In this document: in pieces, positions 5,935-60,991 of the stretch | How the letters are laid out: every line of letters begins with the position of its first letter | How positions within the stretch are numbered: position 1 is the stretch's first letter | Assembly (NCBI GenBank): GCA_002269645.1 | Contig: NIVC01001051.1 | Span: 309,132 to 373,131 of the forward strand | DNA from: Macrostomum lignano | Taxonomy: Eukaryota | Direction of reading: 5' to 3' | DNA: 64,000 nt | The notes under the pieces: generated by a model | The model's input: the letters and a program-made list of their open reading frames with translations, nothing else | Database searches by the model: none | What the model was told of the DNA's origin: nothing | Position numbers and translations under genes: made by a program

Positions 5935-8743
5935 ATGGAAGGAGCCGGCCGTAAAAACCTAATGAATTTGACAATCCCAACATCAAGCGCAGGTGGTGGA
6001 AGCGGTGGCGGCGGCGGCAGCGGCAGTGACTCCGAGCAGAAAAGCGCCACAGGCGTAGTCGATGTGCAACGAGTGATGAAGAAGATGGACGAGCAGGGCG
6101 AAGAGCTGGACGAGAGCCAGCGGCAGAAGCTTGTGGAGTTTGTGCGCCGCAAGCACACTATTGGCGAACTGAAGAATGACGACTTTGCCGATATTGTTGA
6201 GCTGGGCTGCGGCTCTTCCGGTGTTGTACAGCGAGTGTTGCACAAGCCGACTAAACAGGTGATGGCTAGGAAGCTGATCCACCTGGAGATTAAGCCGTCT
6301 GTGCGCACTCAGATTATTCGCGAGTTGGAGGTTAGTTCTGGCTGATCAATATTTCATCTCCCTTCATAGTCGTATTGAGACATTTATTATGTTGAAGTCT
6401 ATTAAAAATGTTTTATGATTTGTTTGGAATCACCCTGAACTCCCTCAGAATCACTCTGAACTCCCTCGGAATCACCCTGAACTACCTCAGAAGAACCACC
6501 CTGAACTCCCTCAGAATCACCTTGAACACACTGAGAATCACCCTGAACCCCCTAAGATGCACCCTGAACTCCCTCAGCATCACCCTGAACTCACTCAGAA
6601 TCACCCTGAACTCCCTCTGAATCACCCTGAACTCCCTCAGAATCAACCTGAGCTCTTTCAGAATCACCCTGAACTCCCTCAGAAGCACCCTGAACCCCCT
6701 CAGATGCACCCTGAACTCATTCAGAATCATACTGAACTACTTCAGAATCACCCTGAACTCCCTCAGAATCATCCCGAACTTCCCTCAGAGTTGCCTTAAA
6801 CTCGAACTCAACAATCCTCATGCACTCTCAGCTAATATAATAATTGAACCGCCTGTCAGGTGCTGCACTCGTGCAACAGCCCGTATATTGTGGGCTATTT
6901 CGGCGCATTCTTTGTCGACTCCTCGGCCACAATCAGCATCTGCATGGAGTACATGAACGCTGGCTCGCTCGACTTGGTGTTGAAGCAAGCCGGCCGGCTG
7001 CCCGAGCCTATCGTGTCTAAGATCACCTTCTCTGTGCTTCGGGGCCTCATCTACCTTCGGCAGAATATCAACTGCCTGCATCGGTGAGTTTCGGAGTTTT
7101 GTCATCCTGACCCACGTTCTGACCCACTGGGTCAACATGAACTCTAATCCCGACCCACGTGCTGACCCGTTGGGTCAATAAGGATTCCGCCTACTGACCC
7201 GCAACCATGACCCACTGGGTCAGCAGGGATTCCGCATACTGACCCGCAACCATGACCCACTGGGTCAGCAGGGATTCCGCATACTGACCCGCAACCCTGA
7301 CCCACTGGGTCAGCAGGGATTCCGCATACTGACCCGCAACCATGACCCACTGGGTCAGCAGGGATTCCGCATACTGACCCGCAACCCTGACCCACTGGGT
7401 CAGCAGGGATTCCGCATACTGACCCGCAAGTCTCTCCCTCAACCCGCAGCGACGTGAAGCCGTCGAACATTCTGGTCAACCTGGAGGGCGAGTGCAAACT
7501 GTGCGACTTCGGCGTCTCCGGCCAGCTGATTGACAGCATGGCCAACAGCTTCGTGGGCACCCGGTCCTACATGGCCCCCGAGAGGCTCAATGGCGAAGAG
7601 TACTCAATCCTGTCCGACATCTGGTCGATGGGACTCAGCCTGATCGAGCTGGCCACGGGCCGGTACCCGATCCCGCAGCCGGACAGCCGGGATTACACCA
7701 ACATATTCAGCAGCGACAGGCAGCAGAACCTGCGCGAGCACATGGAAGCGGCCAAGACTGGCAAACGGCTGAGATGTGAGCTCACGATGAGGCTGTGTAG
7801 AAGATTATACAATATTGAGTTTTATAGATTTTAGAAAATCTGTAAACTGTAATGTTTGTAATTTATGTAAACTATTATCAAATATCCAATGCTCAAAATC
7901 TTAGAACTAAATTTATGATCTGTTTGGAATCGCCCTGATCTCCCTCAGAATCGCCCTGAACTCCCTCAGAATCGCCATGAACTCCGTCAGTATCGCCCTG
8001 AACTCCATCAGAATCGCCATGAACTCCCTCGGAATCACCCCTGAAATGCCTTAGTATCGCCCTGAACTCCCTCAGAATCGCCATGAACTCCGCCAGAATC
8101 GCCCTGAACTCTCTCAGAATCGCCCTAAACTCTCTCAGAATCACCCCTGAAATGCCTTAGTATCGCCCTGAACTCCCTCAGAATCGCCATGAACTCCGTC
8201 AGAATCGCCCTGAACCCTCAGAATCGCCATGAACTCCGTCAGAATCGCCCTGAACTCCCTCAGGATCGCCCTGAACTCCCTCAGAATCGCCCTGAACTCC
8301 CTCAGAATCGCCTTAAACTCCCTCATAATGACCCTGAACTTTGTAAACTGTCTTTTCACCTTATAACTATAGCTGTTACTAAAAGTAGGCTGAAGCGAAC
8401 ATCAACCCAATTCCTATAAATGTCCGCAGGCATGGAGGCTCCGCAGAACGGGCCGAAGCAGATGGCCATATTCGAGCTGCTATCCTATATTGTCTACCAG
8501 CAGCCGCCCAAGCTGCCCAGCTTTGCCTTCAGCGAAGAATTCTGCGACTTTGTCGACTGCTGCCTGCGCAAGAATCCCAAAGAACGCGTCGGCTTAGAGA
8601 GCCTGATGCGTCACGATTTCCCTAAAAAGTACGAAGAGGAACCGGAAGTCAGTCTGGGCAAATACCTGGGCGCTATATTAGACCACGGGCATCCGGTGCT
8701 GGGCGCCTCGTCTAGCAGCTCCTCTTTGGCTAATCCGCAGTGA
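5935..8743 (+). CDS. MAP2K1: Dual-specificity MAP kinase kinase MEK1/2 orthologue, 4 exons, 419 aa
   Basis: Exons 5935-6330, 6860-7083, 7450-7775 and 8430-8743 (GT-AG, phases 0/2/1, total 1260 nt). Motifs: N-terminal D-site RKNLMNL, GCGSSG P-loop, [47 protein letters not shown] and MAIFELL. Confidence 0.95.
6427..6790. repeat. 21-bp minisatellite in MEK intron 1 (GAATCACCCTGAACTCCCTCA)
   Basis: About 17 degenerate copies visible. Confidence 0.9.
7150..7430. repeat. 45-bp minisatellite in MEK intron 2
   Basis: About 5-6 copies; each contains the hairpin TGACCC-ACT-GGGTCA. Confidence 0.9.
7926..8340. repeat. 21-bp minisatellite in MEK intron 3 (GAATCGCCCTGAACTCCCTCA)
   Basis: Same family as in intron 1, with ATCGCC instead of ATCACC. 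Confidence 0.9.
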
Positions 8744-8967: not shown

Positions 8968-10843
8968 GCCCAGACCAAGCTCTTTAGCCCCCGCTGTGCA
9001 GTCTCCCCAGACCAACCCCCAGCCCCCGCCGTGCAGTCACCCCAGACCAAGCTCTAGCCCCCGCCGTGCAGTCACCCCAGACCAAGCTCTAGCCCCCGCT
9101 GTGCAGTCACCCCAGACCAATCACCAACCCCCAGCCCCCGCTGTGCAGTCACCCCAGACCAATCACCAACCCCCAGCCCCCGCTGTGCAGTCACCCCAGA
9201 CCAAGCTCTAGCCCCCGCTGTGCAGTCACCCCAGACCAATCACCAACCCCACGCTGTGCAGTCACCCCAGACCAATCACCAACCCCCCGCTGTGCAGTCA
9301 CCCCAGACCAACCCCCAGCCCCCCGCTGTGCAGTCACCCCAGACCAATCACCAACCCCCCGCTGTGCAGTCACCCCAGACCAATCACCAACCCCCCGCTG
9401 TGCAGTCACCCCAGACCAACCCCCAGCCCCCCGCTGTGCAGTCACCCCAGACCAATCACCAACCCTCCGGTGTGCAGTCACCCCAGACCAATCACCAACC
9501 CCCAGCCCCCGCTGTGCAGTCACCCCAGACCAACCCCAGCCCCCGCTGTGCAGTCACCCCAGACCAACCCCCAGCCCCCGCTGTGCAGTCACCCCAGACC
9601 AATCACCAACCCCCGCTGTGCAGTCACCCCAGACCAACCCCCAGCCCCCGCTGTGCAGTCACCCCAGACCAATCACCAACCCCCCGGTGTGCAGTCACCC
9701 CAGACCAATCACCAACCCCCAGCCCCCGCTGTGCAGTCACCCAGACCAACCCCCAGCCCCCGCTGTGCAGTCACCCCAGACCAATCACCAACCCCCAACC
9801 CCCCGCTGTGCAGTCACCCCAGACCAATCACCAACCCCCAGCCCCCCGCTGTGCAGTCACCCCAGACCAACCCCCAGCCCCCGCTGTGCAGTCACCCCAG
9901 ACCAATCACCAACCCCCAGCCCCCCGCTGTGCAGTCACCCCAGACCAACCCCCAGCCCCCGCTGTGCAGTCACCCCAGACCAATCACCAACCCCCCGCTG
10001 TGCAGTCACCCCAGACCAATCACCAAGCCCCAGCCCCCCGGTGTGCAGTCACCCCAGACCAATCACCAACCCCCAGCCCCCGCTGTGCAGTCACCCCAGA
10101 CCAATCACCAGCCCCCGCTGTGCAGTCACCCCAGACCAATCACCAACCCCCCGCTGTGCAGTCACCCCAGACCAATCACCAACCCCCCGGTGTGCAGTCA
10201 CCCCAGACCAATCACCAACCCCCGCTGTGCAGTCACCCCAGACCAACCCCAGCCCCCCGCTGTGCAGTCACCCCAGACCAATCACCAACCCCCCGGTGTG
10301 CAGTCACCCCAGACCAATCACCAACCCCCCGGTGTGCAGTCACCCCAGACCAATCACCAACCCCCCGGTGTGCAGTCACCCCAGACCAATCACCAACCCC
10401 CCGCTGTGCAGTCACCCCAGACCAACCCCCAGCCCCCCCGCTGTGCAGTCACCCCAGACCAATCACCAGCCCCCGCTGTGCAGTCACCCCAGACCAATCA
10501 CCAACCCCCCGGTGTGCAGTCACCCCAGACCAATCACCAACCCCCCGGTGTGCAGTCACCCCAGACCAATCACCAAGCCCCAGCCCCCCGCTGTGCAGTC
10601 ACCCCAGACCAATCACCAACCCCCGCTGTGCAGTCACCCCAGACCAATCACCAACCCCCGGTGTGCAGTCACCCCAGACCAATCACCAACCCCCCGGTGT
10701 GCAGTCACCCCAGACCAACCCCAGCCCCCGCTGTGCAGTCACCCCAGACCAACCCCAGCCCCCGCTGTGCAGTCACCCCAGACCAACCCCAGCCCCCGCT
10801 GTGCAGTCACCCAGACCAACCCCAGCCCCCGCTGTGCAGTCAC
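8968..10843. repeat. 1.9-kb C-rich variant minisatellite between MEK and KCNQ1
   Basis: Invariant core TGTGCAGTCACCC(C)AGACCAA with variable TCACCAA/CCCCCAG spacers; unit about 27-40 bp. Confidence 0.95.
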
Positions 10844-12380: not shown

Positions 12381-23728
<11,348 letters not shown>

Positions 23729-25732
23729 ATCTGTAGTTTTTAATTGACCGAAATCTCATATTGGAATCGAATCTGAGCTGTATTGTGAAGTTTTATTGCT
23801 CTATAAATCATACTCGTTTTCTTATATTGAATGGGCAGTACTGTAATGGTTTTATTAATAAGAATTGAACCTTATAGTTTTTAAGCATTTCTGTTTTGGT
23901 GGTTGTGCATGTGATATTGAAAACTTATTCGATATGCACATGTACAAATCACAAATATTTTAGAATGACATAAAAAACTTTCTGTCATAATTACAGCTCA
24001 CGCATTTTAGCTTTAGAAATAATTTCGTAGGCTGGTATTTTCTACTTTTGAATTATTGTACTGAAAGTAGCGCGGAAGGAAAAGTCGATATTATCATTTT
24101 TCCTTCGTTCCTTCGTCGTCTGTCTTAATTCATTCATTTTGGCTAGCTGTTATATTCTGCGCAAACGACGCATTTGTGATGAATCAATAATAATATGTCT
24201 TGCGAGTGTTTTACTATATTAATCGATCAATACCTACGCGGCATCAAATATATAGATATAAGGAAATGCACTTCAGACGGTTTTGTAAGGCACCAATTTA
24301 TACCGCGCTTGGGAAATTGCGATCGTCCTGTGTTTTCTGTCGCACAGAGTCATATTTGTGTAAGAATTTTATTAGTGATTTGATCGATACAATTTATATC
24401 AAAATCAAAATCATAAAGATGAAAGATTTCGGTCAAGAAACAGATTCAATAATTTTTTCTACAGGAGCAGGAGTATATTGCCATTGGTGTCAGGGACTTA
24501 CGGGAAGCTGCTTTACATTTTGCCTAGAGACAGTGATTAAGTGCTGAAGTGTATGTCGCATCTCAAATACTGGCTACCAAATTAATTATTCTCACAATTA
24601 AAGCCTAAATGATTAATAAACCCTATGTTATAAATACCCAATTTGTTCGCGTCTATCTGGATATCGACGCGTTAACTCTATTTCGGTGCATCCAGTTCAC
24701 GAGTCGTAAATCGTTTAATTCTGTTATAATTTTCGTACTCAGACGATTTCAAAGAGAATATTTTCAACGAAACAGATCACGGTCTTGTCAAACATCTCAA
24801 ACAAAAAACTGCTAACTTTTCCAGTTTAACTGAACTTTTCAGGCATGATTAACGAGTTCATTTTTTAATTATTGGCAGAATTCCTAGATACACAGCATTC
24901 CTAGTAAACTTTTAGTAACTTTTAGAAAGCTTTTAGTAACTAATTAAAAGCAAAATTTTTGCAACAATGTATATAACATCTTCAAATTCTCTTTTTAAAT
25001 ACAAAACCCTTTGAAACCCTTTGAGAAATTGAAAGAAGCGCCTTGGAACAGTCAGAAAAATATTTTCCATAACTAATAAAAACTTTCAATTCATCATTTT
25101 GTGTTCAAACTTAATGCTTTCCAATTTGGCTTTCAGCTTTGCTTTGAAATTTTTAGGCCTATAGCCAACTACTAGCCTCTGTAAAAATTCTCCTTATTGT
25201 ATGCAATTACAGGCTATAGGTTTGATATTGAATAAATAATTGAAGCTAAGAATTTATAATAGATAATTTAATTACTGAAATGTTGAGATATCTATTTTTG
25301 TTTGTTCTTAGATATATCTTCTATAAATTTAGATGATAATTCTATATTGTTCAAGTCTCTAATGTTCATTAATACTAAAATCTTAAATGAGAAATGAATG
25401 AAATGATAGGCTCCTATTTAATTAAAATAAGTCAAAATACTAATTTGTAATTAAATTTAATTTAATGCTTTGACTAAGCTTTGCCTTACCTAAAGTGTCT
25501 CTAATATTAAGTTTTAAATATAAAAATATAATAATGTTTCCAAAATAAAAGTTTATCTCAAAGTTATGTTGTACAAACAATGAGAATTTCTGCACCAAAT
25601 AGCATACTTTTCTGATGAGCAATGTATTATAGTATAAAAGATGAACTGGTACCTGCCTAATAACAAAGATTCAATAATAGGTAAACTAACTCTGCCATTG
25701 CTCTTCTACATCTGAAATTGGCTCAACTGCAG

Positions 25733-27289
25733 GCTCCATCTCTGCGCCTCTCCGCCAACCTCAGCTGGTTGTTCGCCGACCGGCCTGGCATTGTTGAGCG
25801 GCTGGGCCGCGCGGCGGCTCGCGGCTTTCGCTACGTGGAGGCGATGGACGCCGGCAGCGAGACCCCGGCCAGCCTAGCGGATGCCTGCCGGCACGCTGGA
25901 GGACTTCAGTTCGCCCTTATCAATGCGCCGCCCTGCCGGCCGCCCAGCGGCGATCTTGGCTTAACGGCCCTTCCAGATAGGTGAAATGGAGTGGCAATTC
26001 TTAGCCTACCCCAACCCATCCCCCAATGTACACACGCTCTCAGTCTGCCCCTAAGAATCCCACCCATCCCCCAATGTGCACACGCTCTCATTCTGCCCCT
26101 AAGAATCCCACCCATCCCCCAATGTGCACACGCTCTCATTCTGCCCCTAAGAATCCCACCCATCCCCCAATGTACACACGCTCTCAGTCTGCCCCTAAGA
26201 ATCCCACTCATCCTCCAATGTGCACACGCTCTCAGTCTGCCCCTAATAACTCCACTCATCCCCCAATGTGCACACGCTCTCAGTCTGCCCCTAATAACTC
26301 CACCCATCCCCCAATGTACATACGCTCTCAGTCTGCCCCTAAGAATCCCACCCATCCCCCAATGTACACACGCTCTCAGTCTGCCCCTAATAACTCCACT
26401 CATCCCCCAATGTGCACACGCTCTCAGTCTGCCCCTAATAACTCCACCCATCCCCCAATGTACATACGCTCTCAGTCTGCCCCTAAGAATCCCACCCATC
26501 CCCCAATGTACACACGCTCTCAGTCTGCCCCTAATAACTCCACCCATCCCCCAATGTACATACGCTCTCAGTCTGCCCCTAATAACTCCACCCATCCCCC
26601 AATGTACATACGCTCTCAGTCTGCCCCTAAGAATCCCACCCATCCCCCAATGCACACACGGCTACCAGCCTGCCACTACCAACCATAATATCTTAAATCA
26701 AAAGTTCGAAATGTACTATTGTAACAAAAATTCGAACTTTCCTTCCGGCAGACGCGAAGAATTCCGCGCTGGCCTGTCCGCCGCGGCCGACCTGTGCTCG
26801 GCTCTGTCCTGTCCGACACTTCACGTCATGTCCGGCCGCACGACCGTCCGGAGTCCGGAGGTCCGCGCCGCGTACGTAGACGGTCTGCGTGAAGCTGTCC
26901 AAATTTTTGCGCCTCTCGGCGTCACCTGCGTTATCGAGCCAATTAGCAACATAGCCGATTATTACCTGAACTCGTACACCGATGCGGTGGCCATCATTAA
27001 CGACGTGCCGGGCCTTCGCCTACTGCTGGACCTGTTCCACCTGCAGATGCTAGAGGGCTCGCTTGACTCGCTGCCAGCCTACCTGCCTCTGGCCGGTCAC
27101 GTGCAAATCGCGCAGGCACCTGGTCGCCAAGAACCCGGAGCACCGGGCGATATCGACTATGGCGCGGTGTTGCGTCAGATTGGTGAGGCCGGCTACTCGG
27201 GCTGCGTCGGACTGGAGTACCGACCGAGCGACGGTGCCGAGGCCGGCATCGACTGGCTGATTGAGATGGGCTACCTGCACCCTCATTGA
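25733..27289 (+). CDS. HYI: Hydroxypyruvate isomerase-like (xylose-isomerase TIM-barrel family); genomic CDS lacks its initiator ATG
   Basis: Exons 25733-25980 and 26752-27289 (phase 2). Reads APSLRLSANLSWLF...GFRYVE...LINAP...LHVMSG...VIEPI...LLLDLFHLQ...GHVQIAQAPGRQEPG...CVGLEYRP, matching the HYI pattern (human starts MAPLRFSANLSWLF). Confidence 0.92.
26005..26660. repeat. 48-bp minisatellite in the HYI intron
   Basis: About 13 copies of CCCATCCCCCAATGTACACACGCTCTCAGTCTGCCCCTAAGAATCCCA and variants. Confidence 0.95.
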
Positions 27290-27384
27290 TAGCCACCCGC
27301 TGCGGCCTCTTCAAAGTTTTCCAATTTTCAATAATTATGCCACCGATATGCTTTCGGATAAGGAATTCTAATGTACTACAAAGC

Positions 27385-27550
27385 GGCACCTGGACTGGAA
27401 ACAGGATTTTTAACTTGGGTAGCACCTGGACTGGAAACAGGATTTTTAACTCGGGTAGCACCTGGACTGGAATCAGGATTTTCAACTTGGGTAGCACCTG
27501 GACTGGAAACAGGATTTTCAACTTGGGTAGCACCTGGACTGGAAACAGAA
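27385..27550. repeat. 36-bp tandem repeat downstream of the HYI stop
   Basis: About 4.5 copies of GCACCTGGACTGGAAACAGGATTTTTAACTTGGGTA. Confidence 0.9.
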
Positions 27551-27721
27551 ATTTTAGCATTTCTAAATAACTTTCTGATTGCAATTTTGATTATCCAGAC
27601 ATAAAATTATTTTCAAAGCGCATCTAACTAATTCCTTTGTGGTCCAAACAATTCTATGCTGTTTGCATTCTTCATTCACCGCGAACTGTGCTGCTCCCAT
27701 TGAGACCAAACTGGCCAACCC

Positions 27722-37725: not shown

Positions 37726-40700
37726 TCAGCTGGCAGTCTGCAGCAGTTGGCCATCTTGCCGGCTGCCGCTCCTGCCCAGCATTGCGGTACTCCTGGACTG
37801 AGCGCTGAGAACAGACGGCGAGGTGCACATCGAAGCGTTCATGAACAGTTCAACGTCTCTCAGGTCCGGCCGGCCGGACGAGCCGGCCAGCAGTTTGGGG
37901 ATTCGCATGGGGTTGCGCTTCGACCTGGTGAAGCTGCCGATCAGCTCGTACCAGTAGTATGACGCGCACACCATCAGCAGCTCGGCGAATTCGAACAGGG
38001 TCACTATGCTGAACCCGATCCACAGGCCGAGGACGCCTGCGGATGGGGGAGAGTCAAGTGGGGTCATTGGTTTGGGAGTGTTGTCCACTTGTATGCATCA
38101 ACATTCCCTACACGTTCTTTCAGCCCCAGTGGGATTAATAGAGAGAAACTGAGGAATCACTTATGCCAACCTAGGCCCCTAGAATATAGGGCAGAGCAGT
38201 TCGCGCCACTCTGGCGCCACGACCCCTGGTTCGATTCGATGCAACGCAAAGCACAAAAAAGCAGCATCCCAGTTAAAGGTCGCAATTGAGTGCTTCTGTT
38301 AAAAAACAGAAAGACTTTGCCTTTTAATAGGTACAGTTGCTTTTTAAAAATTCATGTTTTATCGTGTTTTAAATTCTAAGTCGCTTCACCAATCGGGTTC
38401 GTGGGGAGAGTGGGGTCGCCAAGATTTCAATCACTCAGGGTTAGTCCGCAGCCCTTGAGCTCTTGCGGGCTGCAGTGACTCTTAAAATCGAGGCAGCACC
38501 AGGTCAGGGTAGAAGGGGGTGCATAAGCATTGCAATAGTAAATTTTTTACCAATTAAAAGCTTACGTTCTCGCACACTTCAACGCGACAGATATGCGGTG
38601 GCCAGTGGAACCATTTGCGCTGGGAGGGTTGGGAACAGGAACTATACTCAACAAGTCTCTCGATCTGACTAATCGTTTAACTGCAGGATTGAGACCAGTT
38701 TAGCCTATGGACTGCTTTATTAGTTTGTTTTATTCATAGTTTAGCGACTAGGAAGAGACTTCGCTTAATAGGCTACTGGTATATACGCAATGGTTCGGAA
38801 TTTCAATATCACTCCGCGATAAATTATATCACATTGGTTTGGTTAGCATCTCCGACCAGTCCTTATAGGCTCCACTGTTCAGGAAGACGCTTGACGGATG
38901 CCCCGTTCGGTTCGTACCGTATAGCTTATTAAGCTTATTAATAACAATAGTCCAGCTTATTGGCTTCGGCTATGGTGATTTATGACTGACTGTGTCTGCC
39001 AGTGCAGTGCAGTAGGCTCAGAAGGTTTAGTCTAGATTTTGAAGTCCTTCAGTTCGCGCCGCTTTCAACCGCTTCCAACGATTTCGTGTGACCCCGTTAG
39101 CTACGATTATCTGTGAGGCAACTTTAACCATGCAAGATAGTCTTCCTTTGTTAACACCCAGAACTCAGAAACCTGAGCTTGACCTTCACATGACCTTGAA
39201 AACCCCGAAGTCACTTGACCTTGAAGGTAAACACCAAGTCACGTGACTCTGAAAGTATCTAATTCATGAGACCTTGAGCCTCTTCACGGCAATCGGTTCT
39301 AGAACCAGAATCAATTCGAGTTCTAGAACCAGAACCATGTTCCGGAACTGATTCTGTTTTTCGAACCATCAATATGAAGAGCGTCGAACCGGTTCGGAAC
39401 CGGTTCCGTTTTTCGAACCGGCGATATGAAGAGGCTCCTTAAAAGTCGCTCCCGAGCTGTATGATCTTGAAAGGAATCCCAACAATCTGATAGCAAAACC
39501 CCGTTCAGTGCTATGAGTTCTCAAAGAAAATCGTGCATAGCGCATGGATGAATAAAATATCTGGATCGCCAAAAGCTCAATTTGTTTGGTCCTAGCCATA
39601 GACAGGCACCAGCATCACAAGAAGCTCATGACGCCATGAATTTATTGTCTTCACTTGACTCTCATTTGTCAAGTTTGCTTGCAACTCATTTGGCTGTTTG
39701 TTTTCGCCTTTTATTGTTTGTTTGTCAAGGTTTGCAGCTTCTGCAACTGCTATTTGTCTATGTGTGAAAGTACGGCGTCATGCGCTTCTTGTGATGCTGG
39801 TGCCTGTCTATGGCTAGGACCAAACAAATCGAGCTTTTGGCGATCCAGTTACATTATTCATCCATGGTATAGCGTCCTTCTACTTCAGTTGTCCATGGAA
39901 TCTATTTCCAGACTCCGGGACTCCATTTTTCTGTTAACTCTATGAATAACTATCCTATGATAGGCTGTCATAACAAACCTCATACTGCGCTATTAATTAT
40001 TCCATTAGCCGGTTTTATAAGAATACTTTGGAATTCTCGGTGGACAGATCTTCGTCTCTTGTCGATGCGAGAGAAAAATAGATTTAGAATCTCGGTCATC
40101 ACTGGAATTATGGAAAGCATGGAATTATTAATTAAGCCATTAGTTGGCTGCTGCTCAGTTTTGCTAGGCTTTATAGGTCCTAAGTCCGACGTCACGTCTG
40201 CTAGCTAATGACTAAAGGTCTGCGCGTCATCTTATGTCGGCCACACGGCATGGGGGTCATAAAAGCAGGAAGATCCAGGTAATCCCACTTCACACCGTCA
40301 AGTTATTTTTATACATTTGACCTTGAATCATGCACGCTGCGCGTGAAAGGACTAAGAAGGTGGTCCTTGGTCCTAAGCTGGTTATCTGATAGAAGCAGAC
40401 AAGAATATATCTTGTCTGATCCAAATTTTCCAACACTGATCCCTTACTGTAAACGTACCAGGGTATACGTACTCCGACGCACCCTCGCACAGGGTGTACA
40501 AGATTTACGTAGAAAAGCCTTCTTTTACGAAAACAGTTCTATGAAATTTTTGAAGTGCCTTTCCTACTTGAGAAGTCTTTGACCTGCCCCTGCCTGCAGT
40601 ACCACAGCAGTTCAGGGTTCAAATCAATAACCGTCTGTTCTGGGGTTTTCTTTAACTGTAACCCGAATTGACACTGCCCATGCCATGTGGTGCTTCAGTG

Positions 40701-42711
40701 CGTAATACCCCTACCGAACAACAGAAGTGCAGAGTGGTAGACTCTACTGAGCTGGAAGAATCTTGTTTTTTGAAAGCTCCCTGCTGGATTGAGATAATTC
40801 GAAAATCACCTGACGCTTAAGGCACACGTGCAGGAATGCGAGGGCTAATTCTAATTGTTAGTGTGCCGCAACAGTTGTTATAATGTTTAGTAGGCCACAA
40901 CACCAAACAGCCACATCACCAAACAGCCACATCACCAAACAGCCACATCACCAAACAGCCACATCACCAAACAGCCACATCACCAAACAGCCACCTCACC
41001 AAACAGCCACCTCACCAAACAGCCACACAATACAACACAGTTAGCACCATAAAAGCCTATTCTGTAGAAAAAGAAACGCACCACCCATGTCCGAGCAGAG
41101 ATTGACCAGCTCGTAGCTCCTCTCCTCAATGATGTGCCGCACGGTGAGCGTCTCCGGGTAGACCCGCAGCTGCACTATGGATCTGCGCACGAACAGCTGC
41201 ACCCGGTGGCACTCTTTTGGCTCCGGCACCGTCATGTCCTGCGTGTCGTAAGTCTGGCAGCTGTTGGTGTTCAGCTTGTGGTGCTGCATCGACCGTGCCA
41301 AAGCCGACACCGGCATCTCGTCGCCGTGCTGTCGCTCGTACTCGTCAAGCATCTGAGCAATTTTTATCATCTGAATCTGAGCGTTGCGCACCTTGAATGA
41401 GTCTTCAGGCCAAGGGCACTGGGACAGGCTGTACGAGTACTTATTGTAGTTGCAGGAGTCGTAGCAGCTCTCCGGCTTCACTGCATTCTCGGACACATTG
41501 TCGGCGCACATCATCCTGGTTAGGGGCACGTCCAGGCTGGGGTCCATCTGTCGCATTAGTAAGCCGATCTTGATGTAATCGCCCAGGCCTTGGGGTGGCC
41601 CCTCCAGGCTGTCCAGAGCCTTCCTGTAGAGTCGCTTCACAGCGGCAACTCGGCCTGGAGTCGTCACCCCGATCAAGTCGTGGCAAAAGCTCTCGGTGGT
41701 GCTGTTGAAGCCAGGTTTCAGGATCACGTGACTCTCGAGCAGACAGGTGCAGAGCTTGTAAACTTCCTGATGGTACTCGGCTTTGATGCAGTCGAACAGT
41801 TGACGCTCGTAGCTTCGAGTGAAGTTGAACTGATTGTCGAATAGCTCCAGCTGCACGTCCGGCACGCACGGATGCGTGGGCGTGTTGGCCAGAGAGGTTT
41901 TCACCTGCTCGAGGCCGACAGCGGTCAGCGTACCGGTGGGCGCCATGATTCCGTACTCTAACGGGTGCGGGATGGTGTCCCGCTGGTGAATCTGGAACCG
42001 GATGCCGTTATTTTCTAGTCCGGAAGCAAGCCTGGCCAGGCTGTCCAGCTTGAAGCTGGGGTCAGCCGAGGGCACGTAGAGCAGCAGGAAGAGGCCCCGG
42101 TCCATGCCGCTGCTGCGGAGGTGCCTTGCCGGCGGCTTGAATGTGAAGCAGTTGGTGTACAGTCGGTGGTAGAACACCCGGAAGTTGTGATGACTGCAGG
42201 GCTCGCCGTCGAATGTGCAGTAGAGCACCATGTCCATCGGCCGGATGTTTACGTTGGTGATGTTGAGCAGGTGCTCCCAGGTGGTATAGATCATTTCGAT
42301 TGCTTTGCGTTCCTTCCGCCAGTCGTTCTCGGTGCCGAAGTGGCTGTACACCAGGCTATAGGTGATCACCCGTTCGTCCACTCTGTCGGCTTGTTTTGCC
42401 AGTTCTGCGCTGCTGTTGTGAAAGAATCGCTTATTGAGCGGGTCGCAGAAGGTCAGGTCTGGAAACTCGAACGAGTTCGGCTCCTGCCGGTTGGTGCTGC
42501 TCACTGGATACTGCAGGTAGGTCGTCACCTGTTTTGTCGCGTGAATGATGGCACCAAGCAGGGCGCACGACACAATGCCGATCCAGACCATGCGCACCCA
42601 GTTCTGGCCGGAGTTGATCCTGCTGAATCCGTGTGCCGTTGTACCGCTGGTGAAGTTGTGTACGTAGCCGCGAAGCATCGCTCGACGACTGCGCTGCAAG
42701 TCTGACGTCAT
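37726..42711 (-). CDS. DEG/ENaC-family channel, FaNaC-like, 2 exons, 646 aa
   Basis: Exons 42711-41082 and 38036-37726 (phase 1, GTGCGT...CCGCAG). Shows the N-terminal HG motif (TTAHGFSRI), TM1, FPDLTFC, a Cys-rich ectodomain, GIRFQIH and TM2 LCSDMGGVLGLWIGFSIVTLFEF with a GFS filter. Long thumb and knuckle insertions resemble FaNaC-type channels; the subfamily call is inference. Confidence 0.92.
39543..39866. mobile_element. MITE with ~90-bp terminal inverted repeats in the DEG/ENaC intron
   Basis: 39561-39635 (CTGGATCGCCAAAAGCTCAATTTGTTTGGTCCTAGCCATAGACAGGCACCAGCATCACAAGAAGCTCATGACGCC) pairs with 39774-39848 with about 2 mismatches, extending outward to CATGGATGAATAA. The TSD is unclear. 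Confidence 0.85.
40905..41030. repeat. 16-bp minisatellite (CACCAAACAGCCACAT)
   Basis: About 7 copies just inside the DEG/ENaC intron donor end. Confidence 0.9.
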
Positions 42712-43657
42712 TTTGCAAGTCTCTGGCCAGACTGCTGGGAGTCCACAGCATATTGTCCAGACTACTGCATGGCGCCGTGCGAGCGAGTTTTAACAGTAGA
42801 GATTTACCGCTCGAAAAGCTTAGAGGAGGCCGTTCATATGTATATTAGAGTTCAATCTAGTTCGGGTTGGGTGGCACAGCTAGCAGCCAATGGTGGCGCT
42901 CTCAGTCATTCGCTTCCTCTCAGTTGAGGCACAAATATAGCTTGTATTCAGTCGAAGCCATGCGTATTGGGCACCACATTGAGCGTTGCCAGCCAATGTT
43001 TTACGTCTTTTTGCGTTCTAATTCGATAAAACTGCATTCATTTTCATCTTCACCATGAACGCAGTTTTATCGAAATAGAACGCAAAAATGTGTAGTGTTT
43101 GAACAGTTAATGGTGAAGCCAGTGTAAGTTTAGCAGTTCTGTGCTTCCTTGGCAACCAATGCTGTAGCCATAGATAAAGTTCCAAATTACCAATAGCCAT
43201 AACGAAGTACATTATTACAGAGCAGCACTATTGCCAACGTTCTGGCGGTTGATTTAGTCGAATGAAAAATTCAGACAGTTGCCTGAAGAAAAACTTGCAA
43301 AGCTTCAGGCGCTGCATTGCCCATCATTCGTGCTGCGTGCGCGGGGCTGTGGAAACCAGCCCCACACCCGCGCCATCTGCGCGAAGTACTACTTGACTAC
43401 TTGGTCCCGGATTGGGGTAGCGCTGGCTGTTATTAAGGAACTGCTTTTCTTGCACTCGTTTGGCATCGTATATTAAACTAGAAGCAATTCAACAGCAGCT
43501 TCTGCCCGTGAAAGCAGACTTCTTGGTCTGGAAAAATTGATATCTTCTGCTTTTAGGGTATCCGTGCACCGGAAACTCCCTAGCTTTAGACAGTTGCTGG
43601 GGGGTGCACTAGCTGCACTGCTGGAAATAAAGTTAATTGTAGAGGAACAGTTGCTTG

Positions 43658-57052: not shown

Positions 57053-60000
57053 AGTCTGTTCGCACAGCAGCGTCAGCGCCCTGGCTGAGGCGCGAAGTCC
57101 GCCGGCCCGACCTGGCGGCAGGCGGCGCAGCGGCAGCCGGGGCAGCAGGTGGCGCAGCAGGCGGCCCAGCCGGTTCCGCTCCTCGGCGGAGCCCAGGCAG
57201 ATCAGCCAGGTGGTGGGAGGGCGCAGCCGCAGGGTCAGATAAGTGGGGTAGTGCGGATCGTAGCCAATACTGCGGATCTCGTCTAAAGTGACTAGATCGA
57301 CCGTTTCTACCTGGAAGTTTAGAATGAGAAACAGCTCAACTACAGCTATAGAATGCTCAGATTGCAGCTCAACTGCAGCTATAGAATGCTCAGATTGCAG
57401 CCCAACTACAGCTATAGAATGCTCAGATTGCAGCTCAACTACTACAGCTATAGAATGCTCAGATTGCAGCTCAACTACAGCTATAGAATGCTCAGATTGC
57501 AGCTCAACTACTACAGCTATAGAATGCTCAGATTGCAGCTCAACTACAGCTATAGAATCCTCAGATTGCAGCTCAACTACTACAGCTATAGAATGCTCAG
57601 ATTGCAGCTCAACTACAGCTATAGAATGCTCAGATTGCAGCTCAACTACAGCTATAGAATGCTCAGATTGCAGCTCAACTACAGCTATAGAAAGCCACTA
57701 TAATACGTACAGCTCAAATGCTACTTCACAGGAGCCCCAGATCCCGCCCAAGAGCTGCACTCACCGTCCAGACCCCGGGCAGCTCGGCGCCCAGAGCGAG
57801 GCCATGCTCAGTAACCAACAGCGTCAGAATCTTTGAAGTGGCGCCGCTGCCGCTGCCGCCAGCGCCGCCGCGCACCAGAGCGGTGCAAATTGCCTGTTTC
57901 CAAGTGACAGAGCTCTGGCCGCCGATCATGACGGTGTCACCGCCGGCCAGCGTCACCTCCACTACGGTGCCATTGTCGGCGTCCTGAACCAGGCAGCATC
58001 CCCGACAGCCGGCCAGCGACCACTGCGGCCCGCCGTCGCCCGGAGCGGCCAGCAGCCAGCCGCCGGAGAGTAGCAGTCGTCGGCGACTCCAATCGCCGCG
58101 CGGCGGCCGCACAGGCAGCCGGGCGTCGAGCAGCACCTCGTGCGTAGTTAGCGCGTAGTGCATCGGCGCGCCAGACAAATTGGACGCCTCGGCGCGCAGC
58201 CATTTGCCCAGGCCGACGTCTTGGCAGGGCGAGCCGCGGAACAGCGGCACAGTTGGCAGGCAGCGGCGCAAGTCGCGGGTCGCCGATTCGCCGATCGACT
58301 GGTCGACGCAGGCGACAAAATGGCGGGCGGAGCGGACCACGCCGACCAGGTGAAGCAGGTGGCCCTGGCCGCTCTGGCACACGTGATCGAGCGAATCCGG
58401 CCGCCATTCGCACAGCCTGCGTTAATGCGGATGGAATTCTACTACTTTTAGTAGAGTATGCGAGTTATCCGTGATCTACTGCTGTAATATTTAGAGTAAT
58501 ACTGACACGCCAACCCTCCGGAATCCTCCGCTGCCAGGCCCTCAACCCTCCGGAATCCCCCGCTGCCAGACCCTCAACCCTCCGGAATCCCCGCTGCCAG
58601 GCCCTCAACCCTCCGGAATCCCCCGCTGCCAGGCCCTCAACCCTCCGGATTCCTCCGCTGCCAGGTCCTCAACCCTCCGGAATCCCCCGCTGCCACCACC
58701 TCCTTGAAATCCTACAGTCCCAAATGTACTACAAGTTGATTACACGGTAAAAACTGTTAACAATCAACAATGAAAACAAAGGTGACAGAAGCAGACTCCG
58801 CACCTGGACAGAGAACCGGAAGACACCAGTCTAACCCGGCCAGGCGACAGGCACAGCAGGCAGGCCGCCCAGGCGTCGCCTCGCCACCACAGAGCTCTAT
58901 AAGCTGCGCTGAGTGTCGCATCGCCCAACGTGTCCTGAACCTGACGCAACGGCAACGCGTAGTCGCTAGAGAGAGCCGCCGGTTCAAAAGGATTTGGCGC
59001 ATCTGATGTCACTGAATCGTCCGACAAAGATTCATCAGCGTCAGTGTCAGCATCCGTTTTAGCTTTGGCACTGGCTGCATCCGCATCCGCATCCGCATCC
59101 GCATCCGCATCCGCATCTGCATCCGTATAGGCATTCGCTTCATCTGAATATGTGTACACATCAGCATCCGCATCTGCATCCGCATCAGCATCCGCATCCG
59201 CATCAGCATCCTCATCCTCATCAGCTCGCAAAGCCGCTTCGGCCTCTTGTAGTTCGTCGGCCAGCGACCTGGCCAAACTGGCGGGCTGCTGCTGGCCGGA
59301 CCGCGAGAGTTGGTTGCCCGACGCCGCCGCCGCCGACATGGACAACGGCATCGACATTGGCAGCGGAAGAGACGGTCGAGGATGTCGCTGCTGTTGTTGC
59401 CGATTTCTGGACGATCGAACATCGCCATTCAGTTTGACAGGCTCAGCAGCAGCAGGGGGCGCAGGTTGGCTGTCAGGTTGGCTGTCAGGTAAGCTGTCAG
59501 GTTCATCGCTATCGAGCCGCTGCAGCTGGTTGTGATTGTCGGCTAGCAGGCCAGCGGCAACGGGAAAACAGTCGGCATCGTCGTCGGAGTCCGCCAGCGC
59601 CAGCCGATAATAGTTGGATGACGAGCCACCGTTGGCTGCCTGCTGCTGTTTCTGGCGATGCGTCAGCTTGCGCTCAACAACCAGACTGTCTTCCTGCGAC
59701 ATCGCGATGCTGTTGAAATCGGACGACAGGTCCTGCTGCTGCGGCGGCTCGTCCGGCTGCTCGTCAGTCGGAGGCATTGTTGACGAAGATCGAGACGATG
59801 ACGGCGGCTGTTGATCCTGAGAGGAGCCAGTTGACGACGCCTGCGGATGGCTGTTGGCCTCGGCTGGGTCAGGCAGAGCGGAGAGTGAGCCAGACGAGCC
59901 GGACTCGGTGTCGCCGCGGTGCCGATCGCGCCGGGCCGGGTCCTGACAGCCGACGTCCAAGAAGGTGACGGTGGCCCAGGACACGCAGGACAGGTCGCAG

Positions 60001-60991
60001 TGCTCCAGGCCGGCCAGCAGGGTCTGCAATAGGCGGGTTCTGTTGGCATTGGCCAGCAGGGCGTGCGGCTCGTAGAATTTGCGTAGCAGGGGGACATCGC
60101 CGGCAAGGCTGGCCAGATAGGACTCGAGTAGAGACTCGCTGAGAGCCCGGAACAGCCAGGCGCGAGCTCTGCCGTGATTGGTTAGGAGGTACCTGGGCAA
60201 AGATAAGGGATTGAACGGGTACACTGCTGAGGCATGAGCCTGACTGTGCATACGTGCAAACTGAGGAATATAAGCGTAGAATGGATATTATAAGCTGTGA
60301 GGTGTGTACATTGTGTGTGTACATTGAGGGTAGAGAGGTGTGGGCGAGGGCGGAAAATTGTGTGTACATTGAGGGGTAGAGAAGTGTGGGCGAGGGCGGA
60401 AGATTGTGTGTACATTGAGGGGTAGAGAGGTGTGGGCGAGGGAGGAAAATTGTGTGTACATTGAGGGGTAGAGAGGTGTGGGCCAGGGCGGAAAATTGTG
60501 TGTACATTGAGGGGTAGAGAGGTGTGGGCCAGGGCGGAAAATTGTGTGTACATTGAGGGGTAGAGAGGTGTGGGCCAGGGCGGAAAATTGTGTGTACATT
60601 GAGGGGTAGAGAGGTGTGGGTGAGGGCGGAAAATTGTGTGTACATTGAGGGGTAGAGAGGTGTGGGTGAGGGCGGAAAATTGTGTGTACATTGAGTGGTA
60701 GAGAGGTGTGGCCTCAATGCAGGAGAATATTGGAAGGCAAAGGGCTTTAAGCTAGAGTTACCTGCTGGCTTTAATCTCCCGAATAACATCTTTATGGCTG
60801 AGCTCCACAAGCAGGTCCCAGTAGCCGCGCGACGGTGTCCTTAGGCCGTCAAGAAATACTCGATCTAGACAGTGACAGACTTTTTGCACGCAGGGATTGT
60901 CGCTGGTTAGAGCGATGCTCTCGGTGCAGATGCACTGGATCTCTTTGAGGGCGACGCTAAGCCGCTGCAAATGAGCGTCCTTGATGGACAT
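57044..60991 (-). CDS. PLEKHM2: PLEKHM2/SKIP-like RUN-domain protein, 4 exons, 845 aa
   Basis: Exons 60991-60762, 60192-58804, 58416-57765 and 57310-57044 (total 2538 nt). The RUN domain MSIKDAHLQRLSVALKEIQ...LDRVFLDGL...GYWDLL...HGRARAWLFRALSESLLESYL...RKFY...LLAGLE matches SKIP. It continues into an acidic low-complexity middle, a divergent PH-like region and a C-terminal WLICLGSAEERNRL similar to SKIP WVIYLSCTSELDRL. Confidence 0.85.
57330..57690. repeat. 33/36-bp minisatellite in PLEKHM2 intron 3
   Basis: CAGCTCAACTACAGCTATAGAATGCTCAGATTG, about 10 copies. Confidence 0.93.
58511..58700. repeat. 32-bp minisatellite in PLEKHM2 intron 2
   Basis: About 6 copies of CAACCCTCCGGAATCCCCCGCTGCCAGGCCCT. 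Confidence 0.9.
60300..60710. repeat. 46-bp minisatellite in PLEKHM2 intron 1
   Basis: About 9 copies of ATTGTGTGTACATTGAGGGGTAGAGAGGTGTGGGCCAGGGCGGAAA. Confidence 0.93.

What the first reader, a model, noticed from the sequence alone, without database searches (positions are those of the whole stretch)
25681..25760. HYI has no ATG: coding sequence starts in phase 0 at a splice acceptor, fitting a start codon donated by the spliced leader
Seen: an in-frame stop at 25682-25684, no in-frame ATG after it, CTAAC (branch-point-like) at 25686-25690 and ...CAACTGCAG|GCT CCA TCT CTG CGC CTC TCC GCC AAC. Adding a single ATG gives MAPSLRLSANLSWLF, end-to-end with human HYI MAPLRFSANLSWLF. The first internal Met would delete the conserved SANLSWLF. 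Established: flatworm spliced-leader exons end in AUG, and this AUG can act as the initiator. Inference: this gene depends on SL trans-splicing to be translated. A formal cis alternative exists: an AT-rich, non-coding-looking ORF 24195-24359 ending at TGT|GTAAGA is in phase 0.
Basis: partly seen in the sequence, partly recalled or inferred. Interest (0 to 1): 0.8.

Follow-up and report, generated by a model that had tools for sequence, protein, structure and literature searches.

The report
ATG-less HYI gene needing spliced-leader AUG
A hydroxypyruvate isomerase gene of the flatworm Macrostomum lignano has no start codon of its own and begins exactly at a splice acceptor, so it most likely borrows the AUG at the end of the worm's spliced leader; this is one more example of a mechanism already described in flatworms.

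Summary
The window is Macrostomum lignano contig NIVC01001051.1. A two-exon HYI gene (25733-25980, 26752-27289) opens in phase 0 directly after CTGCAG|G. An in-frame TAA lies 17 codons upstream, with no ATG between. All three genomic copies share this layout.

Homology to HYI reaches the first codon. Mammalian HYI starts MAPLRFSANLSWLF; this gene starts APSLRLSANLSWLF. The next Met (residue 37) lies after invariant residues.

The M. lignano spliced leader ends in ...TTGCATG, and the acceptor fits the published trans-splice motif [T/C]TNCAG. Four UniProt models start exactly at the acceptor without Met, and the GenBank models are flagged partial.

It is frameshifted and has lost its GT donor in one paralogue whose HYI is intact.

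One public model joins a donor in the upstream ion-channel gene (23647|GT) in frame to the same acceptor. This suggests co-transcription and remains a minor rival.

No read-level evidence of SL joined at 25733 could be obtained.

The use of the SL AUG as initiator in flatworms has been known since 2006. This is a new member of a known kind, of modest interest.

The parts
25682..25684 (+). In-frame TAA closing the reading frame 17 codons upstream of the coding start
   Evidence: The equivalent in-frame stop is present in all three genomic copies.
25685..25732 (+). 3' end of the outron/intron. It holds CTAAC (25686-25690), a pyrimidine-rich stretch CTCTGCCATTGCTCTTCTACATCT, and the acceptor hexamer CTGCAG (25727-25732). 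There is no in-frame ATG.
   Evidence: The hexamer fits the M. lignano trans-splice acceptor motif [T/C]TNCAG (PMC8629364). The last 25 nt are identical in all three copies. CTAAC is lost in L001.
25733..25980 (+). HYI coding exon 1, phase 0 at the acceptor, encoding APSLRLSANLSWLF...LPD(R). The donor is AG|GTGAAA.
   Evidence: UniProt A0A1I8H9T6 is identical and starts at this base.
25981..26751 (+). Intron of 771 nt, mostly a 48-bp tandem repeat x13.5 (26014-26660)
26752..27289 (+). HYI coding exon 2, ending with TGA at 27287-27289
   Evidence: Pfam AP_endonuc_2 covers residues 26-254, E = 6.3e-33.
23380..23728 (+). Last coding exon of the upstream ion-channel gene (gene 19274-23728). An internal donor ACG|GTGAAC at 23647|23648 is joined in frame to acceptor 25733 in one public model (A0A1I8JS92).
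24195..24359 (+). AT-rich 55-codon ORF ending at TGT|GTAAGA.
   Evidence: paralogue L002 has a 2-bp deletion in it and GT changed to GA at the donor; 6 such ATG...|GT phase-0 candidates were observed against 5.6 expected from shuffles.

Best explanation
This is the hydroxypyruvate isomerase (HYI) gene of Macrostomum lignano, and it encodes no initiator codon. Its pre-mRNA is either transcribed from its own upstream region or made as a read-through from the ion-channel gene 2 kb upstream. It is processed by spliced-leader trans-splicing at CTGCAG|G (25732|25733). The 35-nt SL exon (CGGTCTCTTACTGCGAAGACTCAATTTATTGCATG) ends in AUG. The mature mRNA therefore reads ...UUGCAUG|GCU CCA UCU..., and the SL AUG starts a 262-residue protein, MAPSLRLSANLSWLF..., colinear with animal and bacterial HYI from the first residue. 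Translation of a full-length enzyme therefore depends on trans-splicing. Shown here: the gene structure, the absence of any own ATG in three copies, the N-terminal completeness at the acceptor, and the fit of the acceptor to the motif. Taken from the literature: the identity of the SL and its terminal ATG. Inferred: that the SL is actually joined at this site and that ribosomes start at its AUG.
For: (1) The organism is M. lignano. The protein is 100% identical to UniProt A0A1I8H9T6 and GenBank PAA72937.1, and locus L003 (NIVC01001051.1) contains the window sequence exactly.
(2) The M. lignano SL ends in ATG, with a GTAAG donor immediately after it. 30% of genes are trans-spliced, and the acceptor motif is [T/C]TNCAG (PMC8629364). 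[quoted passage not shown]
(3) The acceptor here is CTGCAG|G in phase 0. All three genomic copies have an in-frame stop upstream and no in-frame ATG. They also carry 5-7 ATGs opening short uORFs (2-24 codons) in the 300 nt upstream, which would hamper translation of an unspliced RNA.
(4) The N-terminus is complete at the acceptor. In an exhaustive HMMER search (4446 hits), query residues 4-5 align to residues 2-3 of most homologues. In about 118 of 145 homologues with the motif, it begins 2-6 residues from the N-terminus. Mammalian HYI starts MAPLRFSANLSWLF.
(5) The only internal Met is residue 37, after invariant A8, G31, V35 and E36 of the family alignment.
(6) Four independent UniProt models (A0A1I8H9T6, FU30, FT49, HG90) begin at exactly the first base after the AG, without Met and without the 16 open codons upstream. 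This is as expected if the transcript evidence ended at a splice junction whose 5' partner does not map locally. The three GenBank models are flagged partial.
(7) The SL-AUG context would be G at -3 and G at +4 (GCAUGG), read from the sequences.
(8) Precedent: Cheng et al. 2006, as summarised in PMC9851317. The SL AUG is in frame in 28% of S. mansoni trans-spliced transcripts, and more than 40 cDNAs need it.
Against: No read, EST or cDNA showing SL joined to GCTCCATCT was available. No M. lignano transcript contigs for this gene were found in the searchable collections. The supplements of the M. lignano transcriptome papers that are held do not list the gene. The GenBank models start 30-33 nt inside exon 1 rather than at the acceptor, so they were apparently not anchored on an SL-read peak. 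One public model (A0A1I8JS92) uses the same acceptor in cis from the upstream gene. The stretch immediately upstream of the AG is only moderately pyrimidine-rich, and the CTAAC is not conserved in L001.
Confidence: 0.78

Rival explanations
1. Cis-spliced fusion or read-through. The acceptor at 25733 is mainly used in cis with the donor ACG|GTGAAC (23647|23648) inside the last exon of the upstream ion-channel gene. HYI would then be translated as the C-terminal part of a channel-HYI fusion that starts at the channel's ATG (19274).
For: UniProt model A0A1I8JS92 (P0021) reads ...SATGLT|APSLRL. Its N-terminal part maps to window 23417-23647, ends at a GT, and is in phase 0. The donor region is identical in all three copies. 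Sharing of acceptors between cis- and trans-splicing is reported as common in flatworms (PMC12582326).
Against: Only 1 of 8 public models is fused. That model comes from an error-containing assembly: it shows a frameshift at its 5' end and read-through of the stop at its 3' end relative to Mlig_3_7. It is itself 5'-partial. The donor GTGAAC lacks the G at +5 of the M. lignano consensus GT[G/A]AG. The splice would remove the channel's last 27 codons and attach a cytosolic TIM-barrel enzyme to a channel tail, an architecture not seen among the best 150 HYI homologues, most of which are about 260 aa. GenBank annotates the two genes separately. An in-frame junction has a 1-in-3 chance.
Confidence: 0.07
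2. An unrecognised cis 5' exon carrying ATG supplies the start. This could be the reader's 24195-24359 ORF or another short exon further upstream.
For: The ORF 24195-24359 exists, ends at a consensus-like donor GTAAGA, and is in phase 0.
Against: In paralogue L002 the ORF has a 2-bp deletion (frameshift) and the donor GT is mutated to GA, while the HYI ORF is intact. The number of ATG...|GT phase-0 candidates in the 2 kb upstream equals the chance expectation: 6 observed against 5.6 +/- 3.1, and 2 against 0.76 for GTRAG. The ORF is 36% GC against 65% for the HYI CDS and has no homology. It would add 55 residues to an N-terminus that is already complete. No public model uses it.
Confidence: 0.05
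3. Non-AUG initiation, or use of Met37, on an unspliced or differently processed mRNA. Initiation could be at the in-frame CTG at 25727 or 25742. Alternatively the locus produces no functional protein.
For: In-frame CTG/TTG codons lie just upstream of and within the first codons. Near-cognate initiation exists in eukaryotes (established knowledge; also PMC9851317).
Against: The unspliced leader carries 5-7 upstream ATGs with short uORFs. CTG 25709 is not conserved in L001. Starting at Met37 removes invariant residues. The ORF, splice sites and family-invariant residues are intact in three copies, and the gene models are transcript-derived, so it is not an obvious pseudogene.
Confidence: 0.05

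Closest known systems
Flatworm mRNAs that take their initiator Met from the 3'-terminal AUG of the spliced leader (Cheng, Cohen, Ndegwa & Davis 2006, J Biol Chem 281:733; called 'slORFs' in PMC9851317)
   Same: The SL exon ends in AUG. The acceptor sits in phase 0 directly in front of the first conserved codon. The gene has no in-frame AUG that could give a full-length protein.
   Different: The known cases were shown with cDNAs and translation assays in Schistosoma mansoni. Here the species is the free-living macrostomorph M. lignano, where SL-AUG use has only been remarked on in passing (PMC10468722). For this gene the SL junction is inferred, not observed.
Hydroxypyruvate isomerase, HYI/Hyi (Pfam PF01261 AP_endonuc_2, xylose isomerase-like TIM barrel)
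   Same: The match is full-length: 44% identity to mammalian HYI and 35-42% to bacterial Hyi. The invariant residues of the family alignment are present, and the N-terminal motif is the same.
   Different: Other animal orthologues recovered (mole-rat, shark, Drosophila, three transcript contigs of unknown invertebrates) all encode their own ATG. The M. lignano gene does not.
Downstream genes of SL-resolved operons in M. lignano (Wudarski 2017; Ustyantsev & Berezikov 2021)
   Same: A same-strand upstream gene is present, and one fused model indicates a shared precursor. An SL-type acceptor lies at the 5' end of the downstream gene.
   Different: The intergenic distance is 2004 bp, against a mode of about 100 bp and a 1-kb repeat-adjusted threshold in the published definition. 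The repeat-adjusted distance could not be computed here.

Membership tests
SL-AUG-dependent trans-spliced flatworm mRNA | The species has an SL RNA whose exon ends in AUG immediately before the GU donor | tested here: met
   Species identified as M. lignano. The SL is CGGTCTCTTACTGCGAAGACTCAATTTATTGCATG followed by GTAAG (PMC8629364). The SL RNA gene itself is not in the window.
SL-AUG-dependent trans-spliced flatworm mRNA | [quoted passage not shown] | tested here: met
   CTGCAG|G at 25727-25732 fits [T/C]TNCAG and is conserved in three copies.
SL-AUG-dependent trans-spliced flatworm mRNA | The SL AUG is in frame with the ORF, and the gene has no own in-frame AUG able to give the complete protein | tested here: met
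   Phase 0. A stop lies 17 codons upstream with no ATG between. The next Met is residue 37, after invariant residues.
SL-AUG-dependent trans-spliced flatworm mRNA | Transcripts are observed with the SL joined at that acceptor | not testable with these tools
   No M. lignano RNA reads or transcript contigs are reachable, and the held supplements do not list the gene. The only indirect evidence is that four UniProt models start exactly at the acceptor.
SL-AUG-dependent trans-spliced flatworm mRNA | Translation actually starts at the SL AUG | not testable with these tools
   This needs N-terminal proteomics, ribosome profiling or a reporter assay.
Hydroxypyruvate isomerase (PF01261) | Full-length match to the family, with the family's invariant residues | tested here: met
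   Pfam E = 6.3e-33 over residues 26-254. The 17 columns invariant in the 17-sequence alignment, including E145, D176, H179, H199 and E238, are by definition also present in this protein. There are 4446 HMMER hits, and the named top hits are HYI. Enzyme activity was not tested.
M. lignano operon, downstream gene | Same-strand upstream gene within 1 kb after subtracting repeats, and the downstream gene SL trans-spliced | tested here: inconclusive
   The upstream gene ends at 23728 and the acceptor is at 25733, a raw distance of 2004 bp. Repeat-adjusted distance and SL reads are not available. One fused model hints at co-transcription.

The most novel reading that the evidence does not exclude
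The HYI acceptor is a switch point shared between SL trans-splicing, which gives a free 29-kDa enzyme started by the SL AUG, and in-frame cis-splicing from the upstream ion-channel gene's last exon, which gives a channel-HYI fusion. The enzyme's synthesis would then be gated entirely by splice-partner choice. In addition, because all copies in this early-branching flatworm lack an ATG, obligate dependence on the SL AUG would be an old, fixed property of the gene rather than a parasite-specific oddity.
Probability: 0.12. Interest if true: 0.45.

Novelty: new member of a known kind. Interest (0 to 1): 0.25.

Why it matters
If confirmed, this gene would be a clean, conserved-enzyme example that the spliced-leader AUG is used as an obligatory initiator in Macrostomum, outside the parasitic flatworms where it was demonstrated. 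M. lignano is the one flatworm with stable transgenesis, so the requirement could be tested directly there.

It also has a practical side. GenBank calls the gene partial and drops 11 conserved codons, and UniProt lists a Met-less protein. Annotation pipelines for SL-AUG species should add the SL-derived Met instead.

It does not change the understanding of the mechanism.

Tried and rejected
1. Direct transcript evidence. An exact-sequence look-up of the 261-aa protein found no contig on record. The 90% cluster holds only UniProt and GenBank genomic models and no transcript assembly. Two word-index searches gave no M. lignano fragments.

2. Gene-level records in the literature. A full-text search for Mlig031072/Mlig001525 gave nothing. 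The held supplements of Grudniewska 2016 and 2018 contain no HYI entry.

3. SL RNA gene or SL sequence in the window or the paralogous loci: none. There is no Rfam family hit in the window.

4. Flatworm orthologues for the same ATG-less acceptor. The best non-Macrostomum hits are vertebrate, Drosophila, bacterial, or unnamed transcript contigs. The three Logan contigs examined all have their own ATG and no recognisable SL, so this comparison could not be made.

6. Synonymous versus non-synonymous counts between copies are too few to say anything: 2 synonymous changes (plus a TGA/TAA stop-codon variant) and 4 non-synonymous between the window and L002. My script failed to locate the L001 donor because of a synonymous CCA-to-CCT change, and I did not pursue it.

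7. Gene names such as Mlig001525.g1/.g3 cannot be used as evidence of position in an operon. The prefix marks a 95%-identity cluster.
Full report
**What is there**

The window is part of Macrostomum lignano assembly Mlig_3_7, contig NIVC01001051.1. The fetched locus L003 contains the window sequence exactly, with window coordinate = L003 coordinate + 15765. The predicted protein is 100% identical to UniProt A0A1I8H9T6, 'Putative hydroxypyruvate isomerase, Macrostomum lignano'.

The gene has two coding exons:
- Exon 1 runs from 25733 to 25980, with donor AG|GTGAAA.
- The intron is 771 nt and consists mostly of a 48-bp tandem repeat.
- Exon 2 runs from 26752 to 27289, with acceptor CGGCAG|A and a TGA stop.

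Together the exons encode 261 residues. They match Pfam AP_endonuc_2 over residues 26-254 with E = 6.3e-33.

**Check of the observation**

- TAA lies at 25682-25684.
- Sixteen sense codons without ATG follow it.
- CTAAC lies at 25686-25690.
- The junction reads CAACTGCAG|GCTCCATCTCTG, with the first coding base at 25733.
- A 55-codon AT-rich ORF at 24195-24359 ends at TGT|GTAAGA.

Sixteen codons without ATG mean nothing on their own. What matters is that homology to the HYI family begins at the very first codon after a phase-0 acceptor.

An exhaustive HMMER search of 1.84 billion representative proteins gave 4446 hits. Query residues 4-5 align to residues 2-3 of most full-length hits. In about 118 of 145 homologues with the hydrophobic-[AS]-A-N-L motif, it begins 2-6 residues from the N-terminus; with a Met added, it would begin 6 residues in here.

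Named top hits include HYI of Heterocephalus glaber (MAPLRFSANLSWLF..., 44% identity), a shark and a Drosophila species.

The first Met in the M. lignano ORF is residue 37. It lies after invariant A8, G31, V35 and E36 of the family alignment.

**Paralogues**

M. lignano carries duplicated chromosomal material. Two further genomic copies were fetched: L001 on NIVC01003031.1 and L002 on NIVC01002811.1.
- All three copies keep TTGGCTCAACTGCAG|GCTCCATCT.
- All have an in-frame stop upstream and no in-frame ATG.
- All carry 5-7 ATGs opening uORFs of 2-24 codons in the 300 nt upstream.
- L001 has a 24-nt insertion in this upstream stretch. It removes the CTAAC and changes one in-frame CTG, so those two features carry little weight.

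An assembly error as the cause of the missing ATG is therefore excluded.

**Does the species fit?**

Yes. The M. lignano spliced leader is a single 35-nt sequence, CGGTCTCTTACTGCGAAGACTCAATTTATTGCATG. In the SL RNA gene it is followed directly by a GTAAG donor. About 30% of genes are trans-spliced. The top motif at trans-splice acceptors is [T/C]TNCAG, found at 9551 of 21754 sites (PMC8629364). The acceptor here, CTGCAG, fits that motif.

Joining the SL to 25733 gives ...UUGCAUG|GCU, with G at -3 and G at +4. That this is a favourable context rests on general Kozak rules and is an inference for flatworms.

**Indirect transcript evidence**

Four UniProt models from the earlier ML2 annotation (A0A1I8H9T6, A0A1I8FU30, A0A1I8FT49, A0A1I8HG90) begin at exactly the first base after the AG. 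They have no Met and do not include the 16 open codons upstream. This is what one expects if the supporting transcripts ended at a splice junction whose 5' partner does not align locally.

The three GenBank models are transcript-derived (Wudarski 2017) and are flagged partial. They start 30-33 nt inside exon 1. They confirm expression and the absence of a start codon, but they do not place an SL site.

I could not obtain reads or contigs with the SL attached. The gene is not listed in the held supplements of the M. lignano transcriptome papers.

**Cis alternatives**

Its GT donor is changed to GA. The HYI ORF of that same copy is intact.

The 2 kb upstream holds 6 ATG-started open stretches that end in phase 0 at a GT with a partly consensus-like donor, 2 of them at GTRAG. 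Shuffles give 5.6 +/- 3.1 and 0.76 +/- 1.1. This candidate is a chance ORF.

Its first part maps to window 23417-23647, which lies inside the last exon of the upstream gene. It ends at ACG|GTGAAC and is in phase 0.

That upstream gene (19274-23728, + strand, own ATG) is an ion channel (Ion_trans and Ion_trans_2). From memory of KCNQ sequences it looks KCNQ-like, but I did not test this.

The fused model is itself 5'-partial. It carries frameshifts relative to Mlig_3_7 at both ends, so it comes from an error-containing assembly. Its donor lacks the +5 G of the consensus.

I read it as a by-product of co-transcription of the two genes, that is a shared precursor. This is common in SL organisms, where acceptors are shared between cis- and trans-splicing (PMC12582326). 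It is not the main product. It nevertheless confirms independently that 25732|25733 is a real acceptor.

Whether the pair counts as an operon is open. The raw spacing is 2004 bp, against a published repeat-adjusted threshold of 1 kb.

**Mechanism and confidence**

The best explanation is that HYI mRNA is matured by SL trans-splicing at 25733 and that the SL's terminal AUG is its initiator. This gives MAPSLRLSANLSWLF... (262 aa), confidence about 0.78.

- Shown here: gene structure, phase, lack of any own ATG in all copies, N-terminal completeness, and the fit of the acceptor to the motif.
- Taken from the literature: the SL sequence.
- Inferred: the SL junction at this site and initiation at its AUG.

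The rivals are:
- cis fusion as the main product, about 0.07;
- another cis 5' exon, about 0.05;
- non-AUG or Met37 initiation, or no protein, about 0.05.

**Comparison with what is known**

The mechanism is established. Cheng et al. 2006 (J Biol Chem 281:733) is cited. As summarised in PMC9851317, the SL AUG is in frame in 28% of S. mansoni trans-spliced transcripts, and more than 40 cDNAs need it. All reported parasitic-flatworm SLs end in AUG (PMC12582326).

The dedicated M. lignano trans-splicing study does not discuss the AUG as an initiator. This gene would therefore be a useful worked example in a transgenic model species. It is a new member of a known kind, not a new mechanism.

Interest is 0.25.

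Noticed in passing
window 26014-26660 and 27386-27556: The HYI intron consists mostly of a 48-bp tandem repeat (13.5 copies, 93% matches). A 36-bp repeat (4.8 copies) lies just 3' of the stop codon. Long ORFs through these repeats are artefacts.
   Followed up: partly
window 19274-23728 (+): The upstream same-strand gene is an ion channel: Pfam Ion_trans and Ion_trans_2 hit exon 19579-20043. From memory it looks KCNQ-like. Its introns are packed with tandem repeats of 61-, 23- (30 copies), 13-, 12- and 31-bp units.
   Followed up: partly
window 25766 versus 25733: GenBank model PAA72937.1 (BOX15_Mlig031072g1, 'partial') starts 33 nt inside exon 1 and omits 11 conserved N-terminal codons. UniProt A0A1I8H9T6 starts at the acceptor but has no Met. 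Both public records are incomplete at the N-terminus.
   Followed up: yes
window 41044-42789 (-) and 37729-38097 (-): A 582-codon uninterrupted ORF encodes an amiloride-sensitive sodium channel (ASC, E = 3.4e-47). A second weak ASC-like fragment lies nearby. ASC genes also flank the paralogous HYI loci L001 and L002, so the duplicated block is larger than the HYI gene.
   Followed up: no
window 7391-7831 (+) and 58767-60287 (-): A protein-kinase exon (Pkinase, E = 8e-26) and a RUN-domain ORF (E = 7e-13) belong to other genes of the window that were not examined further.
   Followed up: no
window 23729-25732 versus 25733-27289: There is a sharp composition contrast. The HYI coding sequence is 64.6% GC (71% at third positions). 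The 2 kb upstream is 30.6% GC.
   Followed up: no
L001 about 9896-9970: Paralogue L001 has a 24-nt insertion in the stretch upstream of the acceptor. It removes the CTAAC and replaces in-frame CTG with TTA. The last 25 nt before the AG stay identical in all copies.
   Followed up: yes
UniProt A0A1I8JS92 (P0021) versus window 23380-23416 and 27287-27350: This older-assembly model is frameshifted at its 5' end and reads through the HYI stop codon at its 3' end relative to Mlig_3_7. This points to indel errors in the ML2 assembly.
   Followed up: partly
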